From: Oikopleura dioica
Lineage: Eukaryota > Animalia > Chordata
Assembly (NCBI GenBank): GCA_907165135.1
Contig: OU015568.1
Span: forward strand, 15,201,208 to 15,265,207
Direction of reading: 5' to 3'
Length of the DNA stretch: 64,000 nucleotides
How positions within the stretch are numbered: the stretch's first letter is position 1; each line of letters opens with the position of its first letter. Position numbers and translations under genes: made by a program. Below the pieces are notes generated by a model. The model was not told where the DNA came from. It worked only from the letters and a program-made list of their open reading frames with translations, and did no database searches. Below, piece by piece: positions 11,547 to 22,244 of this stretch.

Positions 11547-12586
11547 CTCTGAAGTTCTCTTATCAAAAACTATTTCCGTTTATGACAGATTATGTGGTAA
11601 TGATTCTGTCGAGCTGGAGCGGCTGCTTTTATAGTAGAATGGGTGCTCGCGAGCGCCATCCTTTGATTTCCGATGGCGCTGATTTTAAAATAACTAGTGT
11701 GGGCGTGATTATTCATCTCTGATTTCGAAATTTTAAAATTATGCCTCGACGAAAATTCGATCAAATTTGCTTACCTTCTCGATTTTTCTATTGCAAAATA
11801 TTCTAAAATTCTAAAAATAGTTCGTACCTGAGTCCTTGAATGAGTAGTCTGAGAATCGATAAATGCGATAGTGGGCAAGGTTGAGCGCACTGGCTCCCCC
11901 ATTTTCCCTTCTGACTTTCCCTTTCTCATGAACCTAGCTGCATGGAGCGAATAACAACCGTGCATACAAATGACTCATCCATTCCAAATGATTCATAGTG
12001 GCTATTCATCAAACCTTATGCATATTGATTGGGTATCAGTTACTGAATCTGCTCACGTGAGGTGTGAAACGAAATTCATAACCGGAAAAATCATAACCTG
12101 ATCTATCATTTATTGGTTCGTTATTAGTTTTCGGTCATTTTTATTGCAAAAGAGATGCAGGATCAGAGATGTGCCTCGATCAAGTCAAACAGAAACTGAT
12201 ACGATTCTTGACACCCTTGTTCAATCAGAAAGAATCGCGACCGGATAATGCTTCAATTAGTCTTGCTGGGATCTGTTTGCTGGCCAAACTTGTTATGAAA
12301 TCCGGTATTGTTTTTACTGTCAAAGTTTATTAATGACGTCAGTAAGATTCTATCAGTGGAATATTCAAATCTGCCCTTGGAAATAATGAGCAATAAATAC
12401 TTGGTGGTGCAGTCAGGATAGCCCGCGGCCGAGTCCACTCACTTTTTTCTCCACCAAAGCCACAAGCAGCTGAATTCGCATACACTGCACGAGAATCCTT
12501 CAAATCAACTATGCAAAAGTTAGATGAGATTTTTCCATTGTAATTGAAGTGTTTCTCGTACTCAGTAGAACTGAGCCAGTGAAATT

Positions 12587-15500
12587 ATGGCCGATGATTT
12601 TAAGAGCATTCCAGATGACCAACAGACAAACGATGATCAAGGTAAAATCATTACTTATTTTAGTAATAAATAGAAGCTTTTATAAGGGCCGATTATTCCT
12701 TACAACTACACGGAAATCCGACGCCAGAAAACAAAGAGAATCGCCCGATCTTTACGGACAATTCTTGTTATAACAAACATCGTCTTCTGGTTTGCTGGAT
12801 GTGGAATGCTCGGAGTTTCTATTTGGCTTCGATTTTCAAATGATTTTGTGCAACTTTTATCCAACTTCAACACGCTGAATATCATTCTTTTGGCGATGTT
12901 GGCGGTTGGTGTTTTGTTCTTGGTTATTGCTCTGATTGGAACTTGTGGTGCTAATATGAAGAATAAGATTTTACTCATAGGAAGGGATTTTTAATTTTGT
13001 AAAAAGTAAACTCATAAATTTTTAATTATGGTGAACGATCTCTAAATACCCAGGGAACACCGAGGGAACCAAATTTGGCTCTTCTCAGCGGGATATCAGC
13101 AGGATACCGGATGCACTCTTATCGAAGTTCTCGATCTACCTTGACTTTTCTTATCTTATGTAAAATCTCGCAAAGCCTATCTCTGCGCAACTTCAACCGC
13201 AGCCATGGTGGAAGTCATCGTTGTTCTAGTCTGGGCAAGTTTTCGCGAGAGTTTCAAAGACCACTTTGCCGACTGGTACGAATCTGTCTTTCATCTTTTC
13301 GGTACGGAAAGTGAAGCTAATAATCGTGATATCGTCGAGTCATTTCAAATTTACTTGAAATGCTGTGGATTGAACTCAAAAGAAGATTTCATGAACCTTG
13401 GCTTTGCTGTTCCAGCGAGTTGTTCCTGGAAGTCAAAGAATGAAGTGGGCGTAATTATAACGACCGACTTTGAGCAAGGATGCATCGAAGCTCTTTCTGA
13501 TCTGATTGGAGAATATCAAAATGTTCCGTACTACGTTCTTCCTTCTTTATGCGGATTACAGCTTATTGGAATTATTTCTGGAATAATCCTGCTTTTATTT
13601 TTGGTAAAACACGACGATTTAGCACAAGAAGATTCCGAACTCGACTCGGAGCTTGATGACCATGATAGAAATGCTCCCATTGAGCTCCCTAAACCAAAAC
13701 TTTACAGGATTCTAAAACGCTCAATCGACACATTCGGACTTGACATGGAATACGACGAAGAACGCAGAGGTCACGTGGTTCGAGGAATCAATGAGAAATC
13801 AAACACGCACTACTCGGGATTAACACTTGGTTCGCGAGTCATCGAAATCGGCGGGGTTATCGCTCAAAATGTGTCTATCGGCGAAATAAAAAATCACATG
13901 AAAGCAATTGGCAACGAATTGAAAATCCTGGTTGTTGAAGAAGCGGCTGATATGGTTTACAAAGAATACAAAGTTGCTGTTAATCTCAGAAACGTCGCTG
14001 GTGTAACGGCTGAAGAAGTTGATTACTTCCCAAAATATTGCACGCTAAAGAAATCGGGCAATTTTGGTCTTGGATTTCATTTGCTTTATTTGGAAGATCG
14101 AAAAGGCATTTTGATCCAAGAAGTTGCGCCACGTGGAGCAGCCGCCAAAGCCGGGCTCAAGATAGGCGATCGTATCGTAGAAGTCAACCATGAAAATATT
14201 GAGACTCTCAAGCCATCAGAAGTCATTAGCAAGATTCGGGACTCCGGAGACGAAGTCGCCCTCGTTTTAGTCGATCCAAGAACAGATGGCTACTTCCGAA
14301 AAAAGGCCGTTACAGTGACAGCTAGTCTGGCGGAAAACTATTTTGATGGAAGACCAGGGATAACCAAGCAGCGGCGAAAAAATACGGAAGCAGCCCAAAT
14401 CCGACCAAGGTACTGCAGATTGACAAAGGTGCCACAGGAAGATTACGGTCTCTACGTTGTTATTGATAACAACCGAATTGGCCAAGTCATTCGATGGGTG
14501 GATCCTGGAGGACCAGCTGATCGAGCAGGTCTGAGAATCGGTGACAGAATTATTGAAATCAACGGTCTCAATGTGGAGTACGAAACTCACAAGCGTCTTC
14601 TCGCCACAATCAAGGCCGGAAGAAATCTTGCCCATTTCATTGTCGTCGATGAAGATTACGACAAAAAATTCACAAGGAACAAACCAAGACTTATTCGAGT
14701 CACACGAGGTCAAGCGAACGGATTTGAAGGACTTGGGTTCAAAATAAGATTGGACGAAGAAAAGGATGGGCATTATATCGACCAAGTGTTTCCGAATGGA
14801 CCAGCAAGCGAGGCCAATCTGCAAGTTGGTGACCGTATCATTCAGTTGAATGGTCACACCACTGAAGGTATTGAATTCGAAGAAATCTATCAACGACTTG
14901 AGAATTTTTCATCATCGCAGTGTATTATGCTGGTCACTGATACTACGGCGAACGCGCATTACAAGTCTATTGTTGAGTTTAAAACTCAAGGAATTGAAGA
15001 GAACGACTGGGACTCCCAGTCGATCCCTGATCAGCCACTCTTCTTGCCGACTGATTTTGAGTCGTCTGATACCGAAACTGACTACACTGATGAAGATCAA
15101 AGTACTGTCCATGGTGGTGACACCTACTCCCTTTCAAATGCAGACACTCAAAGTTACTTGTCTGATAGTACTATCGCCAGCTCTAGAAGAATCGCACAAA
15201 AGCTAGGGGCTCCAAGAGTTTGCCACATTCAAAAGAGTGATTATGAAGAGCTCGGATTCTTCTTGGCCATTGACCGTGATCGAGATGGAAACATTATCCG
15301 ACGAATCGAGCGAAACGGTCCAGCTGACCGAGCTGGTCTTCGCGATGGAGACAGAATTCTCAAGATTGATGGAATAAATGCCGAAAAATGGTCCCACGAA
15401 AAGGTTGTCGAAACAATTGTCAGCGCGAGGAATGACTTTACTCTGACTGTAATCGATGAGCGATCTGATGATGCCAGACTAAAGAACCGTCCTTACATCT

Positions 15501-17623
15501 TCAAAATCATGAAGGGCAAGGGAGGTTATGGTTTCTGCATGTGGCACGATACTGATGGCCATTTTGTTGAAAGCGTTACTGCCAAATCGCCTGCTGACAA
15601 AGCTGGTCTGAGAACTGGCGATCGAATTATTGAAATCAACTCTGTCAACATCGAAAAAGAAAACGTAGAAGACGTCTTTTATCGAATCAAAGCCTGTCAT
15701 AATATGGTAACACTTCTCGCCGTGGACTCAAAGACGTTTGGTCTGATGAAGAAGAACAGGATTTCGCTCGACAAAATGAAAGCAGAACTCGGTTTTTCCG
15801 GATACAAGGACTGGGTCGGGCTCCGAAACAAGCGCCAAGCAGTTGACAAAGATGGCAAAAAGGTCAATGTTGTTTACAAAAAGCCGAAATTTACGTTGTC
15901 AAAAATGAGAAAATTGGCGATGAAAGTTGGGGCTTCCACATTGCGAATCAGTTCTCTTTCATGGGTAACGAAGATGAAGAGGGTGACAAGAGCAACGGAC
16001 ATGTTGTTCATTGGGTTGAAAAGGGAGGACCTGCTGATTATGCTGGCTTGAGAGATGGCGACAAAGTTCTTCAAATTAACGATACAGAAGTCGGCTCCCT
16101 TCCATACGAAGAAATGATGGAGATTTTCAAAAAGGTTGAAGGAGACGAACTCAAGCTTGAAATCGAGTACGAAGATATGGCAGACGAAGAGCAAGCACGC
16201 GACGTAGAGATCGTAAAAACAGATGCGGAAGAGCTCGGTTTCGTCCTTTGGTTCGATGAGAACGGACATTACATCGAAGACGTCACCATTGGCAGTCCTG
16301 CTTATAAAGCTGGTCTCAGAGGAGGTGACCGGCTGCTGGAAGTTAGCCATCATAATGTAGAGTTGGATGATCACGAGGCTGTTGTACAGCTCGTGAAAGA
16401 ATCTGGAAATATGGTCAGCCTCAACGTTCAGTCAGTCAAATCAAAAACGGCTGGTACAGGAAAGGTTTAAAACGCTCCGGAATTAATCTGAATTTCTACA
16501 AGAGTATTACAGTAAAAAATTTTATTGCATCTTAAAACCTTCCAAAGCTACTGTTGAGCGAATGGTTCACGTTCAAAAAGAAAACGGGTCTTTCGGCTTC
16601 AGTATCAATCACGACGAAATCAACGAAGGATATTACATCAAAATGATTGCTGAGGATGGCGCGGCTGCTAAAGAAGGCATCAACGTCGGAGATAGAGTTC
16701 TCGAAATCGACCGGGATCCCATCAATGAGCTTTCATTTGACGATGTCGTCGCAAAGATCAAGGGAGCAGAAGTGTTGACACTTACAATCTTGTCCCAGCA
16801 TAGAACTGATAAGACAACAGCGAGGCCAAAGGCGAAGGATGGCGATGCTAAAGATAAAGGTAAGAAAAATCTTTGATGACGATTTAACGGTGTACTGTAG
16901 TTGACAACAACATCATCAAAACTCTCATGGGCGAGGAGAAGATCGACTACGTCGTCAAGCCTCGATTCCTCCAGCAGAAGCGCGATGAAAAGCGCGGTAG
17001 TGACTTCAGAAAGAAGACGAAGATCAACGAAGATCTCAAGAAAGAATTGACCCCAGAAGAGATCGCCGAAAAGAAAGCGAAGAAAAAGAAATCTGTAAAG
17101 AAGGGGGTTGCTTTTGGAGGAACTGAAGTTGCTATTATCGGTAATTTTAGCTTTACCATTGACATCTTTTAATTGCTAATTCAAGGTGATGATGGAGGAG
17201 TGGAGAAACCAAAGACTGGTCTTCTCAAGCATAAAAAGAATAAAACTGCCCCTGAATCCGCAGAAATGAAAGCCAGGAAGCGTGAGCGAACTATGGCCGA
17301 CATGACCAAAGGTAACGGCTGATGAGAAGTCTTCATTGACCATGTTTTTTTCTAGCAATGCGAAAACGTACTCTTGAATCGCGAGAACGCGTGATTGAAA
17401 AGCAAGATGCGAAGGCTGAGCGTTCGGCAGAGAAGAAGTCGAAGCGCTCTGGCAAGAGTTCACGATCTTCGAGAGCTAAAGAAGGCGATTCCGAAAAGTG
17501 GGATTGGGAAGATGAAACTGCTGCTGCCATGAATTCCATCCCAGAAGGTTTGCTATTCCTTTTGCCTTAGAAATAACTGTATGTTTAGACGTCAATTCGG
17601 AAAATGCCTACATGGAGATGTAA
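12587..17623 (+). CDS. Tetraspanin fused to about 9 NHERF/PDZK1-type PDZ domains and a Lys/Glu-rich tail
   Basis: TM1 (ILVITNIVFWFAGCGMLGVSIW), TM2 (AVGVLFLVIALIGTCGA), TM3 (YLCATSTAAMVEVIVVLVW), EC2 with CCG...PASC...GC, and TM4, followed by repeated GF/GL...(GP)ADRAGLRxGDRIIEIN PDZ motifs. Exons start at 12587, 12687, 13176, ~16548, ~16901, ~17187, ~17357 and 17589. A frame break near 15885 is unresolved. Confidence 0.9.
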
Positions 17624-18849
17624 AACTAACAAAATTAAAAAATGTGCCCAAAAATGCTTTGCCAGTTTCAACGGTAGTACAAATGCACCAACAAAATGCT
17701 TCTTCTTCAGCGACTCAACAATTATACAAACTTCTGTTCAATACTTTCCATTATTCTTTAAAAATAACACTGATATAAGATGAATAAATGCAATACTAAT
17801 AAATAAATATAAATCCCTCCTCGTTATTTTATGGGAATAATCTTTTGCTTAGTCATCTGGTCGTCAAATAATGAAGACCAAAATGAATGCCCAAAATAAA
17901 AAGCAATTACTGAAAAGCCTTTTTAGAAATAGAAAATAGAGAAGATAAATGCCGTTCTATGGAATTTTGCTTCACTCGCGTAAGTTCGGCGGCGGAGATT
18001 CTAGATATGCGTGGGCTAGAGAGATCACCTGAATTGCAGGTTCTAACCCAATCAGTCCGATTGAAGACTAAGAGAGCTGATAATTTTTCGGCTAAATTGC
18101 CAGTGAGAGAGCTGGACTTTTAATAATTGATTAAAAATTAACAGGTATTGAAATGCTCAATTAAACATAAGGATAAACTCAATAAGAGTTCTAGTGAACT
18201 ACTATATGAGTGTGTTTCCTCAGAAAAATGCTCATCATTCGTTAGGATACTTTCGTAGGAGTGGCTTATCTAGTTAGATTATCATTTATGATGAAGAATA
18301 CGTTTTTTTGGTTACTCTTATGCATTCTTCTCCAAAAATGTTATTTTAACGGGATGGGCCACTCCTACGAAAGTCAAGTTGAGTCTGGTTCAAATTCTGA
18401 AAACTACTGATCGCGCGAGGCCAATTTTTAACCTACGCAGCGCATCCAAACTCGTCCAATCTTGCGCGCTGCTTCACCTTCCACAATATTCTCGTCAACT
18501 TCTCGTCGGATTTTCTTTTTCTATCGGACTTACAGTCAGTTACAGTACTAACGATGATTCTTGAGAGAGATTGTTTTTGAGAAGAAAAGCGCGGCTGCTT
18601 GAACGGAATTCGCGCCTCGAAATCGAGCCTTGAATTTTATGAGCTACTTGAGCGTTTTTGTTTGACACCGGCTCATTTTGAGATGTTTTTGATTGGATGT
18701 TAATTTGCAAGAGAAAAGTGATTTTATTTGGTCCTTTGACAGAAAAAACTCAATTATTTTTTCCACTTTTTTACTTTTGAAACCCATTTTATCCACCTTT
18801 TCGATGATCAAATTTGAAATTCATGAAATTTATCGACATCGTTTTAGAC

Positions 18850-21356
18850 ATGAAAGATGCATCTTCGAGCGGAAGTGCTGACGACGGAGCGATACTTGCA
18901 GATGGAAAGAAATTGGACGATTTGCGAAATGCGCTGGAAAGCGGAAAAGACCAGCAGCAAATTGATGCGATGAAAAAAGTCATCGGCTACATTGCAAAAG
19001 GTAAACTTAAATTTCCAGCGAAAGATATTTTTATTTATTTTTCAAGCAAAATTTAAATATTGATCCGCGCCTTCTCTTTTTGTATTGATCGCGTTTAGGC
19101 CGAAATGCGTCTGCCCTCTTTCCCAATATCGTCAAACTTGTCGCCTCCTCTCAGCCCGAACTCAAGAAGCTCGTCTATGTCTACCTCGAGCGCTATGCTG
19201 AGGAGCAGCAAGATCTTGCTCTTCTCAGTATTTCGACTTTTCAGCGAGGTCTCAAGGATCACAATCAGGTTAGAATCAACGCCAATGATCGAGTCCATTT
19301 ATTACTCTTTTCTAGTTGATTCGAGGCTGTGCCCTCCGAGTTATGTCATCGATTCGACTTCCCATCATTTCCCCCATCCTTCTCCAGGGAATATCCGAAG
19401 CATCAACGGACATGTCTCCTTACGTTCGAAAAACCGCGGCTCATGCGATCCCCAAGCTCGCCTCAATCGATCCAGCGACGCGGGAGCAACTGATCGAAAT
19501 CATCTCACGATTACTTGGTGATCGGGCGCCCTTGGTGGCCGGATCTGCTGTGCTAGCTTATCTCAGAGTGTGCCCAGATAGGGTCGATCTCTTGCACAAG
19601 AATTACCGCAAACTCTGCCAAATGCTCATCGATGTTGACGAATGGGGTCAACTCAGGTTCGCGAAAACCCGTAAATACGCGACAATAAAACAATGCCATT
19701 TAGGTTTCTCGAAGTACTCACTCGTTACGCGCGAACTCAGTTCACTGCGCCTAAAGCGGGCAAACTTGACTTCGACCATCAACTTCTTTTAACAGCCTGT
19801 CAGCCGTTGCTTCTGAGCAGAAACGCAGCGGTCGTTCTCAAAGTCGTCGCAACTTGCCAAGAGCTCGGAACTGACGAAGACATTGCAAAGACCATCGGCC
19901 CTCTGATGAATCTTGCGAGCGGTGATCGCCGAGAGACAAAGTTTCTAGCGCTTGAAGTCGTCTATCGACTGGCTTGTAGCTCTCCTCATCTGGTTTCTCC
20001 GTATCTCAAGAACTTTACGATCTTCTGGGCAGAGTCGGAGCAGATCGCGCTTTTGAAAATAAAGAGTAAGAAAAGTTTCTCGACTGAATATTTATTAACT
20101 CTATTCATCAATTAAGTCCTCACAAAACTCGCCGTTGGCTCCCCAGGCACCGCTCATCAAGTCAATCGCGAGCTGGAGACGATCTCATTTTGGGACAAAG
20201 AAAAACTTGCGACAGAAGCAGTCCGCTCGTTGGGCGAGATCGCTACCGTGCCTGAGTTAACTCAGACCACGCTCGTCAAGCTGATGACCTTAATCAACGA
20301 CAAGAGAGAAGTCGTCTCTGGGGAGGCCGTTGTGTCCATCCAAAAGTTAATTCAAATCAACCCGGAGCGAAACGAGCCCGTCATCAAAAAACTCGCCCGT
20401 CTTTATATAAGAGAAACTGTTGGAACCAGCAACGCCAAGTGTTCTATCCTCTGGCTCGTTGGTGAATACGCTCATTTCATCTCAAAGGTCGCTCCAGATG
20501 TTCTCCGCGTCGCCGCCAAAGCTTTCATCAAGGAAGTCGACGAGGTCAAAATGCACACGCTTACACTCGCTGCCAAGATGAGCGTCCAAAGTGAAATCCC
20601 AGAGCAAGTTGCGCTCGCCACGACTTATGTTTTCAACTTGGCCAGGTACGATCAGTCCTACGACTTGCGAGATAGAGCGCGCTTCCTCAAGAATCTCATC
20701 TTTGGCGAATTGGAGTTGTCCAAATTTTCGAAGGCGATTTTGACAGCTCCAAAGCCTGTTCCGACTAAAGTGGAGGTCGACGAGCGATTCCGTTGTGGAA
20801 CACTCTCTAGCAGCCTGGGAATCGAAGCGCGAATGTACTCAGCGTTACCAGACTTCGCTCTTGAAGCGTCACCCTCATCACTTCGAGAGCTTCCGAAGCC
20901 AATCAAGAAGGCCCCTGCCAAAACAACAGTTGCGAGAAAAGCGAGCAAATCAGTGAGCTCGAGTGAGTCTGAGAGCGAATCCGAAAGCGAGTCTGAATCC
21001 GAAGATTGTACGTCTGGACCAGATGCTGAGAGCCAATCTGAAAGTGAATCAGAGTCCGAAAGCGAATCGGAATCATCTGAAGGCGAACCAGAGTTGTCAG
21101 AAGAATCGGCGTTGGTAAAAACTGCGATCACGAATGCTGCAGAGGCTGTAGCTGCCGAGCGAGCTCCTTCCGAGTCCGGAGATCATGCTGTTGCAATCAT
21201 TGAAGACTCATCAGACCCAGAAGCGCCGCCTATCGCTGAAATTATCATTAATCCGGACAGACAAGCATCGAATGATTCCTCGCCCGAACCCAAGTCCACT
21301 GTATCGTCGTAGCGAAAAAGTTTCCACTGATACTTCATCTCTAGAACATATTCTAA
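18850..21356 (+). CDS. AP3B1: AP-3 complex beta subunit (trunk plus acidic hinge; no ear domain detected)
   Basis: [77 protein letters not shown] and an (SE)n hinge. It ends at 21312 unspliced, or at 21356 via intron 21301-21344. Confidence 0.95.
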
Positions 21357-22244
21357 GTCATTTGTTTCTTATCAAACTCATTTGTGCAATATTTACTACA
21401 GTGCATGTTTCTCCTACTTTTCTTTCCACTTATTATGTCTTCAACGTCGCCCTTTCTTCAGAAATTTAACTAAAATCAACCTTTTAGAGCCGGGATATGC
21501 GCGAAAAATGAGCGAATGTACTGCCTTCTGTTCTTGATACCGCTACTATTAGTTCCAAAGCCAGACAACGAGATTTTATCTTTTGAAATAGCTATTTTTC
21601 GATGTAAGTTTGATTATTATTGCAATTTGGAGAGCCTAGCAACGCTTGATCCTTTGGATCACGTGATAGAATTCGAGATTTTCTAGAACATGGGTTGGGA
21701 TGGGTGTTGTTTTCAAAATTTAGTCAGTTGCGAAAACAGCATCCAACAGGTAAGATGTCCGGATTTTCGTTCTTTTTACTCTATTTTTTCACGAAAAAGC
21801 TTGCTTGGGTTATTTATTAATTGTTTTTACAATAAGTCTCAAACTAAAGAAACTTCTAGCGCTGTGCCTATTATGCACATTCGTTGAGCTGCGCCCATGC
21901 TTCCTGTGCGCCCTCATCTTTCTGGCATTATTGAGCGGCTTTTGTATCAACAACCAGAAGGAATGTATTTTCTTGACCTAGTATTTGGATAAATTTTATT
22001 CAATAACCATTTTCGAAACTGTCTCTTTTTGTGATACAATCAGAAACTGCCATCAACTGCCGCGGGCTCACTTCGCCGTTCAAAACTTGTTCACTTGAGT
22101 TTTTGTTTTCGAGCGAAAGTGCCAGCCCCAGCGGTTTTCTCGATTTTCCTTGTAAATTGCTGTCCAGAGATCACCACTAGATGCCTTTAAAATGTCCCTG
22201 TTCAGAGAATAATCGTTGTTTTTATTTAGAAAAAGTCGAACAAC

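What the first reader, a model, noticed from the sequence alone, without database searches (positions are those of the whole stretch)
12587..17623. Tetraspanin fused to about nine NHERF/PDZK1-type PDZ domains: a self-anchored membrane scaffold
Seen: a complete 4-TM tetraspanin (TM1-TM2, short inner loop, TM3, EC2 with CCG and a 4-Cys pattern, TM4) continues into PDZ repeats. TM3, EC2, TM4 and PDZ1-6 lie in one uninterrupted exon (13176 to ~15885), so the fusion cannot be a gene-merging artefact. I count 9 PDZs: 1 degenerate, then ones starting FPKYCTLKK, RPRYCRLTK, KPRLIRVTR, APRVCHIQK, RPYIFKIMK, IYVVKNEK, RDVEIVK and ERMVHVQK. VDPRTDGYF after PDZ2 resembles the NHERF post-PDZ helix. An acidic Ser/Thr/Asp spacer splits PDZ4 from PDZ5, and the tail is Lys/Glu-rich. 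Known: tetraspanins normally have very short cytoplasmic tails and recruit PDZ proteins in trans, NHERF1/2 have 2 PDZs and PDZK1 has 4, and the post-TM4 tail is cytoplasmic, so the topology fits. Inference: this protein hard-wires a tetraspanin microdomain to a multivalent scaffold for channels or transporters. I know of no described protein with this architecture.
Basis: partly seen in the sequence, partly recalled or inferred. Interest (0 to 1): 0.92.

Follow-up and report, generated by a model that had tools for sequence, protein, structure and literature searches.

The report
Tetraspanin fused to nine PDZ domains
A real, conserved Oikopleura dioica gene joins a four-pass tetraspanin membrane protein to nine PDZK1/NHERF-type PDZ domains in one chain, so a scaffold that other animals tether to the membrane through separate partner proteins here carries its own anchor.

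Summary
One ORF (13205-16051) carries tetraspanin TM3-EC2-TM4 and five Pfam-significant PDZ domains. With exons 1-2 (TM1, TM2) and the downstream exons, the gene (12587-17623, 8 exons) encodes about 1510 aa: a complete 4-TM tetraspanin, an acidic linker, nine PDZ domains and a Lys/Glu-rich tail.

One detail was missed. The "exon end" near 15885 is not an intron. It is a 1-nt shortfall in an A-run (15878-15882). A DNA contig of the same lineage and the Norwegian reference both have six A's and read straight through, so PDZ7-8 lie in the same exon.

Against the Norwegian O. dioica genome, synonymous sites are saturated (pS 0.74) and pN is 0.038 along the whole length. An O. dioica paralogue has the same 4-TM plus nine-PDZ layout. 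At least six environmental relatives carry tetraspanin plus PDZ; one is a single intron-free genomic ORF.

The PDZ domains sit in one clade with PDZK1/NHERF3 and a Ciona four-PDZ protein. Ciona PDZ1-4 match PDZ2, 4, 5 and 7 here.

No paper describes this architecture. The public gene model lacks TM1-2. The function, a self-anchored scaffold for membrane-protein C-termini, is inferred and not shown.

Earlier notes of this scan did not cover it.

The parts
12587..12641 (+). Exon 1: start codon and cytoplasmic N-terminus
   Evidence: ATG and exon conserved in the Norwegian genome. Joint 12641/12687 seen in RNA runs X13 and X8.
12642..12686 (+). Intron 1 (45 nt, GT..AG)
   Evidence: Spliced reads and contig.
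12687..12980 (+). Exon 2: basic pre-TM1 stretch, TM1 (12758-12826), EC1, TM2 (12878-12946), inner loop, start of TM3
   Evidence: Pfam Tetraspanin profile 20-77. Aligns without gaps to intron-free orthologues. pN 0.037 against pS 0.67 versus Norway.
12981..13175 (+). Intron 2 (195 nt, GA..AG, phase 1)
   Evidence: The only in-frame join that reproduces the orthologues' TM2-TM3 sequence. Donor ATAG|GAA conserved in Norway while the intron body is 39% identical. GA-AG introns are frequent in O. dioica (PMC7072748). Not seen in reads.
13176..13603 (+). Start of exon 3: TM3, EC2 (CCG, PxSC, GC) and TM4 (13526-13603)
   Evidence: Pfam Tetraspanin 39.7 bits, hydropathy and Cys positions. The family profile hits TSPAN7, CD9, CD81 and TSPAN15 in PDB.
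13604..13684 (+). Acidic linker after TM4 (net charge -9), same ORF
   Evidence: RNA contig of X8 runs unspliced over 13447-13662. The equivalent stretch is disordered in the orthologue model.
13685..13972 (+). PDZ1 (divergent)
   Evidence: Family HMM 2e-31. Pfam PDZ 14.9 bits, below threshold. The orthologue's PDZ1 models as a PDZ and matches NHERF1/2/3 PDZ structures.
14021..14296 (+). PDZ2 with VDPRTDGYF extension; counterpart of Ciona PDZ1
   Evidence: (clade support 100/97).
14396..14662 (+). PDZ3 (His at alphaB1); best PDB match NHERF1 PDZ1
14675..14950 (+). PDZ4
   Evidence: PDZ4 of the orthologues and the paralogue groups with Ciona PDZ2 (80/88).
14951..15202 (+). Acidic Ser/Thr/Asp spacer (net charge -12)
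   Evidence: 95% amino-acid identity to Norway.
15203..15472 (+). PDZ5 (His at alphaB1); best PDB match PDZK1 PDZ1; groups with Ciona PDZ3
   Evidence: (98/90).
15479..15742 (+). PDZ6
15878..15882 (+). A-run one base short: frame change inside the exon (assembly error or private allele)
   Evidence: X1 DNA contig has an extra A behind 15877 (depth 128 of 128). Norway has six A's. P0001 reads through this point in frame. No RNA splice here: X8 contig 15615-15833 is unspliced.
15883..16179 (+). PDZ7 (with an insert in the beta2-beta3 loop); groups with Ciona PDZ4
   Evidence: 97/91.
16189..16443 (+). PDZ8 (His at alphaB1)
16465..16558 (+). Intron 3 (94 nt, GT..AG in my model; the public model uses a neighbouring in-frame pair of sites)
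   Evidence: Not covered by RNA contigs.
16559..16859 (+). Exon 4: PDZ9 (to 16801) and start of the tail
   Evidence: Pfam PDZ 58.9 bits. Joint 16859/16901 in RNA.
16901..17140 (+). Exon 5: Lys/Glu-rich tail
   Evidence: Identical order in P0001.
17186..17311 (+). Exon 6: tail
   Evidence: joint 17311/17356.
17356..17547 (+). Exon 7: tail with conserved KWDWE motif
   Evidence: (joint 17547/17589 in X14 and X8).
17589..17623 (+). Exon 8: C-terminus ...AYMEM and stop codon
   Evidence: An orthologue in a TARA scaffold ends ...PLVEL, so a hydrophobic-Glu-hydrophobic end is shared.

Best explanation
This is a functional Oikopleura dioica gene for a protein of about 1510 aa. Its N-terminal 260 residues form a complete four-pass tetraspanin. 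Its cytoplasmic C-terminal tail, instead of the usual few residues, is an acidic linker, nine PDZ domains of the PDZK1/NHERF3 type and a 216-aa Lys/Glu-rich tail.

Shown here: the architecture, its conservation in a paralogue and in other plankton species, purifying selection along its whole length, transcription and splicing, and the kinship of the PDZ domains.

Inferred origin: a tunicate four-PDZ PDZK1-like gene (the state kept in Ciona H2XRV4) was joined downstream of a tetraspanin gene and gained five more PDZ domains. This happened before the duplication that gave the two O. dioica paralogues.

Inferred mechanism: the tetraspanin places the protein in the membrane, probably in tetraspanin-organised patches. 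The nine PDZ domains, all with an intact hydrophobic-Gly-hydrophobic carboxylate-binding loop, hang in the cytoplasm and capture C-terminal tails of membrane proteins, much as PDZK1 clusters transporters and channels. Three PDZ domains carry the class-I His at alphaB1 and six carry a non-His residue there (five hydrophobic, one Pro). The covalent anchor would do the job that MAP17 or NHERF-ezrin does for PDZK1/NHERF in vertebrates. The conserved hydrophobic-Glu-hydrophobic C-terminus may bind one of the protein's own PDZ domains, giving autoinhibition or chaining.
For: - Single ORF with Tetraspanin plus PDZ.
- Full gene model of 1510 aa, with four introns confirmed by spliced RNA.
- An RNA contig crosses TM4 into the linker unspliced.
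- Four TM segments, the CCG/PxSC/GC cysteines and positive-inside flanks.
- Nine PDZ domains.
- The orthologue in the Norwegian genome is 94% identical in protein and 79% in DNA. pS is 0.74 and pN 0.038 in every segment, including those downstream of the frame change.
- The paralogue P0007/P0009 has a tetraspanin plus nine PDZ domains, and each PDZn pairs with PDZn of this gene. Its TM1 lies in frame upstream of the annotated start.
- Environmental relatives carry both domains. P0011 is one 608-aa ORF in three TARA or Logan DNA contigs. P0006, P0008, P0010 and P0012 also carry both. L007 and L010 carry introns that splice in frame.
- PDZ kinship: PDB best hits are PDZK1 and NHERF1/2. NHERF3 proteins and Ciona H2XRV4 align over 94-95% of PDZ2-4. 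All these PDZ domains form one clade at 100/99 against Scribble, GRIP and PTPN13 PDZ domains. The fold matches too.
- C-terminal motif.
Against: - No experiment or expression pattern bears on function. Bulk RNA runs of the species gave only a few 3'-end reads.
- No single read or contig spans the tetraspanin and the PDZ array end to end, and the exon 2-3 junction was not seen in RNA.
- The window as assembled has a frame change at 15878-15882 that would truncate the protein after PDZ6.
- The Norwegian assembly has its own 1-nt insertion in the tail of PDZ2, so a decaying gene cannot be dismissed on the assemblies alone.
- Six of the nine PDZ domains lack the alphaB1 His typical of NHERF/PDZK1 domains, so their ligands may differ from PDZK1's.
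- The Ciona comparator lacks a start Met, so when the fusion arose is uncertain.
Confidence: 0.8

Rival explanations
1. Two neighbouring genes (a tetraspanin and a multi-PDZ gene) were merged by misassembly or by reading through.
For: The public model P0001 starts inside the tetraspanin. In some metagenome contigs the ORF caller lists the tetraspanin and the PDZ array as separate ORFs (L007, L010).
Against: TM3-EC2-TM4 and PDZ1-6 share one stop-free ORF here. The Norwegian genome is collinear and in frame across the junction. P0011 and P0006 are single ORFs across the junction in independent contigs. The L007 gap is a GT..AG intron that restores exactly the junction sequence of P0006. An Illumina contig and an RNA contig cover the junction.
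Confidence: 0.02
2. The gene is a recently inactivated pseudogene: the 1-nt deletion at 15878-15882 is real and truncates the protein after PDZ6.
For: The window sequence has five A's. No contig of run X1 identical to the window was laid over 15513-16079. The Norwegian assembly also has a frame-breaking indel elsewhere.
Against: pN is 0.02-0.05 against saturated pS in PDZ7, PDZ8, PDZ9 and the tail, which lie downstream of the break. An intact six-A version exists in the same lineage (X1) and in Norway. The break sits in a homopolymer, the typical site of long-read assembly errors. Spliced RNA from downstream exons exists.
Confidence: 0.07
3. The locus mainly yields separate products: a plain tetraspanin and/or a soluble PDZ scaffold, made through internal polyadenylation, an internal promoter or SL trans-splicing. 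The fusion would then be a minor isoform.
For: No read or contig spans the whole transcript. O. dioica uses trans-splicing widely (general knowledge, not tested here).
Against: The open frame, the linker (96% identical to Norway) and the in-frame introns at the junction in other species are all conserved. That is not expected if the join were unimportant. An RNA contig runs from EC2 through TM4 into the linker.
Confidence: 0.12
4. The fusion is real, but the PDZ array serves the tetraspanin's own trafficking or a cell-junction or secretory role, in the manner of syntenin-CD63 in endosomal sorting, rather than clustering transporters or channels.
For: Tetraspanins are known to use PDZ partners for sorting (established knowledge). 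Six of the nine PDZ domains lack the class-I His. The tail is highly charged and of unknown role.
Against: The nearest relatives of the PDZ domains are PDZK1/NHERF, not syntenin. Syntenin matches at only about 1e-7, against 1e-20 for PDZK1.
Confidence: 0.2

Closest known systems
PDZK1 / NHERF3 (vertebrates) and the Ciona intestinalis four-PDZ protein H2XRV4
   Same: The PDZ domains are closest to these in sequence, tree and fold. Tandem PDZ array. The post-PDZ motif VDPxTDG(F/Y) is shared with Ciona, and a looser form occurs in bird and turtle PDZK1. The chain ends in Leu or Met, as PDZK1 does.
   Different: Nine PDZ domains instead of four. Covalently joined to a 4-TM tetraspanin. C-terminus Met/Val-Glu-Met/Leu rather than Thr-x-Leu/Met. 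Long charged tail. Six PDZ domains without the alphaB1 His.
Tetraspanins of the CD9/CD81/TSPAN7 kind
   Same: Four TM segments, short EC1, EC2 with CCG, PxSC and a further Cys, and polar Asn/Glu/Gln in TM1/TM3/TM4. The family profile hits TSPAN7, CD9, CD81, TSPAN15 and CD53. The model matches CD53, CD9 and TSPAN15.
   Different: The C-terminal cytoplasmic tail is about 1250 aa instead of a few residues. No one-to-one orthologue was identified: the nearest named relatives are 'tetraspanin-18-like', 'CD9/CD81-like' and 'CD151-like' from other phyla.
Membrane tethering of PDZ scaffolds in trans: MAP17 (PDZK1IP1)-PDZK1, NHERF1-ezrin, CD63-syntenin-1 (from established knowledge, not tested here)
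   Same: A small membrane protein or a tetraspanin holds a PDZ scaffold at a membrane. This is the same logic as proposed here.
   Different: There the link is a reversible PDZ-ligand or ERM contact between two gene products. Here it is a peptide bond, with fixed 1:1 stoichiometry.
O. dioica paralogue (P0007, OKI2018_I69 XSR g14144; P0009)
   Same: Tetraspanin plus nine PDZ domains in the same order.
   Different: Only 34-36% identical. The CCG motif has become CC-Phe. The tail differs.

Membership tests
Tetraspanin (PF00335) | Four transmembrane helices, short EC1, large EC2, both termini cytoplasmic | tested here: met
   Four hydrophobic segments and none later. Basic residues lie before TM1, in the TM2-TM3 loop and after TM4. 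The orthologue model has four long helices plus an EC2 head.
Tetraspanin (PF00335) | EC2 with a CCG motif and at least two further conserved Cys (PxSC and a Cys near TM4) | tested here: met
   C179-C180-G181, C199 in PASC, C219 in QGC. These columns are nearly invariant across the family.
Tetraspanin (PF00335) | Pfam profile match over the full domain | tested here: met
   The two exon pieces score 29.5 bits (profile 20-77) and 39.7 bits (profile 89-222) against a cut-off of 32.1. The intron-free orthologue P0011 scores 114.6 bits over profile 6-222.
Tetraspanin (PF00335) | Short cytoplasmic C-terminal tail (typical of the family, not formally defining) | tested here: not met
   The tail after TM4 is about 1250 aa.
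NHERF family / PDZK1 (NHERF3) | PDZ domains of the NHERF type (closest to NHERF1-4 among all PDZ domains) | tested here: met
   PDB best hits at 1e-20 to 1e-18 are PDZK1 and NHERF1/2. Clade support 100/99 with PDZK1 and Ciona against Scribble, GRIP and PTPN13. Fold matches.
NHERF family / PDZK1 (NHERF3) | Soluble adaptor with two (NHERF1/2) or four (PDZK1, PDZD3) PDZ domains and no membrane span | tested here: not met
   Nine PDZ domains behind four TM segments.
NHERF family / PDZK1 (NHERF3) | C-terminal ERM-binding domain (NHERF1/2) or class-I C-terminal PDZ ligand Thr-x-Leu/Met (PDZK1) | tested here: not met
   No EBP50_C hit in Pfam. The C-terminus is Tyr-Met-Glu-Met, while bird, turtle and ray NHERF3 end in Asp-Thr-Lys/Gln-Leu/Met.
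NHERF family / PDZK1 (NHERF3) | Binds C-termini of transporters, channels or receptors | not testable with these tools
   Needs peptide-binding or pulldown experiments.

The most novel reading that the evidence does not exclude
In appendicularians the PDZK1-type scaffold may no longer exist as a soluble protein. It would have been captured by a tetraspanin and expanded to nine PDZ domains. Through a conserved class-II-like C-terminus (Met/Val-Glu-Met/Leu) that fits its own non-His PDZ domains, it would chain head-to-tail into a two-dimensional, membrane-embedded lattice. That would be a tetraspanin web and a PDZ scaffold made of one polypeptide. This reading also predicts that no free PDZK1/NHERF gene is left in Oikopleura.
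Probability: 0.2. Interest if true: 0.78.

Novelty: new variant of a known kind. Interest (0 to 1): 0.62.

Why it matters
Tetraspanin microdomains and PDZ scaffolds are two of the main ways in which animal cells organise membrane proteins. So far they are known to meet only through weak, reversible contacts between short tetraspanin tails and separate PDZ proteins.

This gene is a natural covalent fusion of the two. It has been conserved and selected through an old gene duplication and across several plankton species. That argues the coupling is useful in itself, and it offers a ready-made model for what fixed 1:1 tethering of a multivalent scaffold to a tetraspanin does.

It also corrects the public record. 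The deposited O. dioica models miss TM1-2 in one paralogue and TM1 in the other, so the proteins are filed merely as "PDZ domain-containing".

Tried and rejected
- I first looked for an intron to explain the frame change near 15880 and enumerated G[TCA]..AG candidates. The 92-nt GT..AG candidate 15792-15883 looked plausible. It was rejected because the X8 RNA contig is unspliced over 15615-15833, because X1 and X8 carry T>A at 15793, which would destroy that donor, and because X1 and Norway simply have one more A.
- A word-based search for long proteins sharing the tetraspanin part (P0006 residues 1-245) returned only the query itself, so it says nothing.
- The ESM Atlas look-up gave tetraspanin-only and PDZ-only clusters and none with both. 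All scores were about 0.65, so this is only a lead.
- P0076 looked like a stand-alone tetraspanin relative, but its contig has PDZ1 exons downstream.
- I tried to fetch the Ciona locus of H2XRV4 to see whether a tetraspanin lies upstream. It is not on record.
- An exact-pattern scan of JGI metagenomes for the 5-A or 6-A version of 15869-15900 found nothing.
- Bulk RNA runs X13 and X14 of the species gave only 8 and 17 reads, nearly all at the 3' end and 90-95% alike (another lineage). They could not test the internal junctions.
- Two look-ups of the scan's earlier notes returned nothing relevant.


Full report
**What is in the sequence**

The + strand between 12587 and 17623 holds one gene of eight exons.
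- The longest ORF (13205-16051, 948 aa) gives both Pfam Tetraspanin (profile 89-222 of 225) and five significant PDZ stretches in a single frame.
- Upstream, exon 1 (12587-12641) and exon 2 (12687-12980) encode a basic N-terminus, TM1, EC1, TM2 and the inner loop. The exon-2 piece matches Tetraspanin profile 20-77.
- Downstream ORFs add two PDZ domains (15961-16470) and one more (16562-16876).
- The spliced model is 1510 aa.
- A hydropathy scan finds exactly four membrane segments (43-65, 83-105, 113-139, 234-259) and nothing hydrophobic after residue 270.
- EC2 carries CCG, PxSC and GC. Basic residues flank the cytoplasmic sides.
- A family HMM finds nine PDZ domains.
- PDZ1 is below Pfam's threshold (14.9 bits). 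In an orthologue it is modelled with pLDDT about 90 as a PDZ fold, and it superposes on NHERF1, NHERF2 and PDZK1 PDZ structures at 1.3-2.0 A. The N-terminal part of the same model matches CD53, CD9 and TSPAN15.
- A 27-aa acidic linker follows TM4. An 84-aa acidic Ser/Thr/Asp spacer separates PDZ4 from PDZ5. The last 216 residues are Lys/Glu-rich.

**Gene model and read evidence**

I laid two RNA runs of the species, a DNA-like run (X1) and a plankton metatranscriptome (X8) on 12300-17950.
- Four introns are confirmed as GT..AG joints: 12641/12687, 16859/16901, 17311/17356 and 17547/17589.
- X8 contigs at 90-99% likeness cover many exon stretches. One of them, 13447-13662, runs from EC2 through TM4 into the linker without a splice.
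- Intron 2 (12981-13175) has a GA donor and was not covered by RNA. Three things support it. Intron-free orthologues fix the junction to the residue. The donor ATAG|GAA is conserved in the Norwegian genome while the intron body is only 39% identical. GA-AG introns are known to be frequent in O. dioica (PMC7072748).
- Intron 3 (16465-16558) is unverified. The public model uses a neighbouring in-frame pair of sites.

PDZ7 starts in a different frame from PDZ6, and there is no room for an intron.
- I enumerated possible introns, but the data point elsewhere.
- The window has five A's at 15878-15882. The only X1 contig over this stretch has an extra A (depth 128 of 128), the Norwegian reference has six A's, and the public protein reads straight through.
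- With six A's, the exon runs from 13176 to 16464 and holds TM3 to PDZ8.
- The break is therefore a homopolymer assembly error or a private allele.
- The Norwegian assembly has its own 1-nt insertion in the extension of PDZ2. The public model hides it with an invented intron, losing 14 residues.

**Is the gene alive?**

The window is O. dioica, but from a lineage far from the Norwegian reference: 79% DNA identity and 94% protein identity.
- Codon by codon, synonymous sites are saturated (pS 0.74) while pN is 0.038.
- Every segment has pN between 0.007 and 0.097. That includes exons 1-2, the linker, the spacer, PDZ7-9 and the tail, which lie downstream of the break.
- Introns are 39-60% identical.
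- This is strong purifying selection on the whole chain.

**Is the fusion conserved?**

Yes.
- A second O. dioica gene (P0007 in the Okinawa assembly, P0009 in the Norwegian one; 34-36% identical) also has a tetraspanin followed by nine PDZ domains. Its TM1 lies in frame just upstream of the annotated start.
- In the PDZ tree, each PDZn of this gene pairs with PDZn of the paralogue (n = 1, 3, 5, 6, 7, 8, 9, mostly with high support). The nine-PDZ array therefore predates the duplication.
- Environmental relatives at 42-57% identity (P0006, P0008, P0010, P0011, P0012) carry both domains.
- P0011 is one uninterrupted 608-aa ORF, with Tetraspanin at 114.6 bits plus three PDZ domains, in three independent TARA or Logan DNA contigs.
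- In scaffold L007 the two parts are separated by a GT..AG intron. Its removal recreates exactly the junction sequence of P0006.
- In L010, PDZ1 exons follow the tetraspanin ORF.
- A tetraspanin-only profile was run against 1.84 billion representative proteins. Of the 148 best hits screened with the family PDZ HMM, only three fragments carry a PDZ domain. Two known full-length members, P0008 and P0009, are also on the list. The other long hits have no PDZ.
- The organisms behind the environmental contigs are unknown. Other appendicularians are the likely source, but this is an inference.

**Where the parts come from**

- The PDZ domains match PDZK1 PDZ1 and NHERF1/2 PDZ1 best among solved structures (1e-20 to 1e-18).
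- PDZ2-4 align over 94-95% of their length with the Ciona protein H2XRV4 (35% identity) and with NHERF3 of birds, a turtle and a ray.
- In the tree, all PDZ domains of this family, of Ciona and of PDZK1 form one clade (100/99) against Scribble, GRIP and PTPN13 PDZ domains.
- Ciona PDZ1, 3 and 4 sit with PDZ2 (100/97), PDZ5 (98/90) and PDZ7 (97/91). Ciona PDZ2 sits with PDZ4 of the orthologues and the paralogue (80/88).
- This fits a four-PDZ ancestor that gained PDZ1, 3, 6, 8 and 9.
- The Ciona entry lacks a start Met and its locus could not be fetched. Whether ascidians have a tetraspanin upstream is therefore open. Its PDZ spacing equals that of vertebrate PDZK1.
- The tetraspanin part matches TSPAN7, CD9, CD81, TSPAN15 and CD53. 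It has no clear one-to-one orthologue.

**How it probably works (inference)**

- The topology puts the whole PDZ array in the cytoplasm.
- All nine PDZ domains keep the hydrophobic-Gly-hydrophobic carboxylate-binding loop.
- PDZ3, 5 and 8 have the alphaB1 His of class-I domains. The other six have Ile, Pro, Phe, Val, Tyr and Phe at that position, so a mix of ligand classes is likely.
- By analogy with PDZK1, the array would collect C-terminal tails of transporters, channels or receptors. The tetraspanin supplies a permanent membrane anchor and, as tetraspanins do, lateral association in the membrane.
- The chain ends in Tyr-Met-Glu-Met in both O. dioica lineages and in Leu-Val-Glu-Leu in the L007 species. 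PDZK1 proteins end in Thr-x-Leu/Met. A self-ligand for autoinhibition or chaining is possible but untested.

**Comparison and novelty**

- The protein is not a member of the NHERF family as defined: it has nine PDZ domains, is membrane-embedded, and has no ERM-binding domain or class-I tail.
- It is a tetraspanin by every structural criterion tested, apart from its tail of about 1250 aa.
- Full-text searches found no paper that combines tetraspanin and PDZ with Oikopleura, or Oikopleura with PDZK1. The only hit for a fused tetraspanin-PDZ architecture was an unrelated review.
- The sequences are public but unnamed and mis-modelled.
- I rate it a new variant of a known kind: a new, lineage-restricted architecture built from two well-known modules. 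It is real and selected, with its function still to be shown.

Noticed in passing
window 15878-15882: The A-run is one base shorter than in a same-lineage DNA contig and in the Norwegian reference. It breaks the ORF in the assembly and is probably a homopolymer assembly error.
   Followed up: yes
L005:5084-5120 (Norwegian reference FN653030.1): The reference assembly has its own 1-nt insertion (an extra G) in the extension of PDZ2. The public model P0001 skips it with an invented intron, losing 14 residues. P0001 also starts at an ATG inside intron 2, so it lacks TM1-TM2.
   Followed up: yes
L011:3830-4000 (Okinawa assembly, paralogue g14144): The annotated start of the paralogue misses an in-frame upstream stretch that encodes a tetraspanin-like TM1 (...HIFNWLLGGIAIVSGML...).
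   Followed up: partly
window 17623-17722: Reads of RNA runs X13 and X14 (another lineage, 90-95% alike) skip 98 nt right after the stop codon, with AA..AA ends. This is more likely a 3'-UTR indel between lineages than an intron.
   Followed up: no
window 19105-21470 (+): The downstream neighbour is an adaptin large-subunit gene (Pfam Adaptin_N in two ORF pieces).
   Followed up: partly
L007:16066-22289: In the TARA scaffold that carries an orthologue, the downstream region holds a run of ORF pieces of Na/sulfate-type SLC13 symporters, and a 7TM receptor lies upstream. This differs from the neighbourhood in O. dioica.
   Followed up: no
P0077 / L006:702-2423: One environmental family member has about 245 extra N-terminal residues, rich in Arg, Asp and Glu, before TM1.
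   Followed up: no
window 13640-13662 and X8 contig: The acidic linker contains a short direct repeat (Asp-Ser-Glu-Leu twice). One metatranscriptome contig has a 23-nt loose end that resembles this repeat, probably an assembly loop.
   Followed up: no
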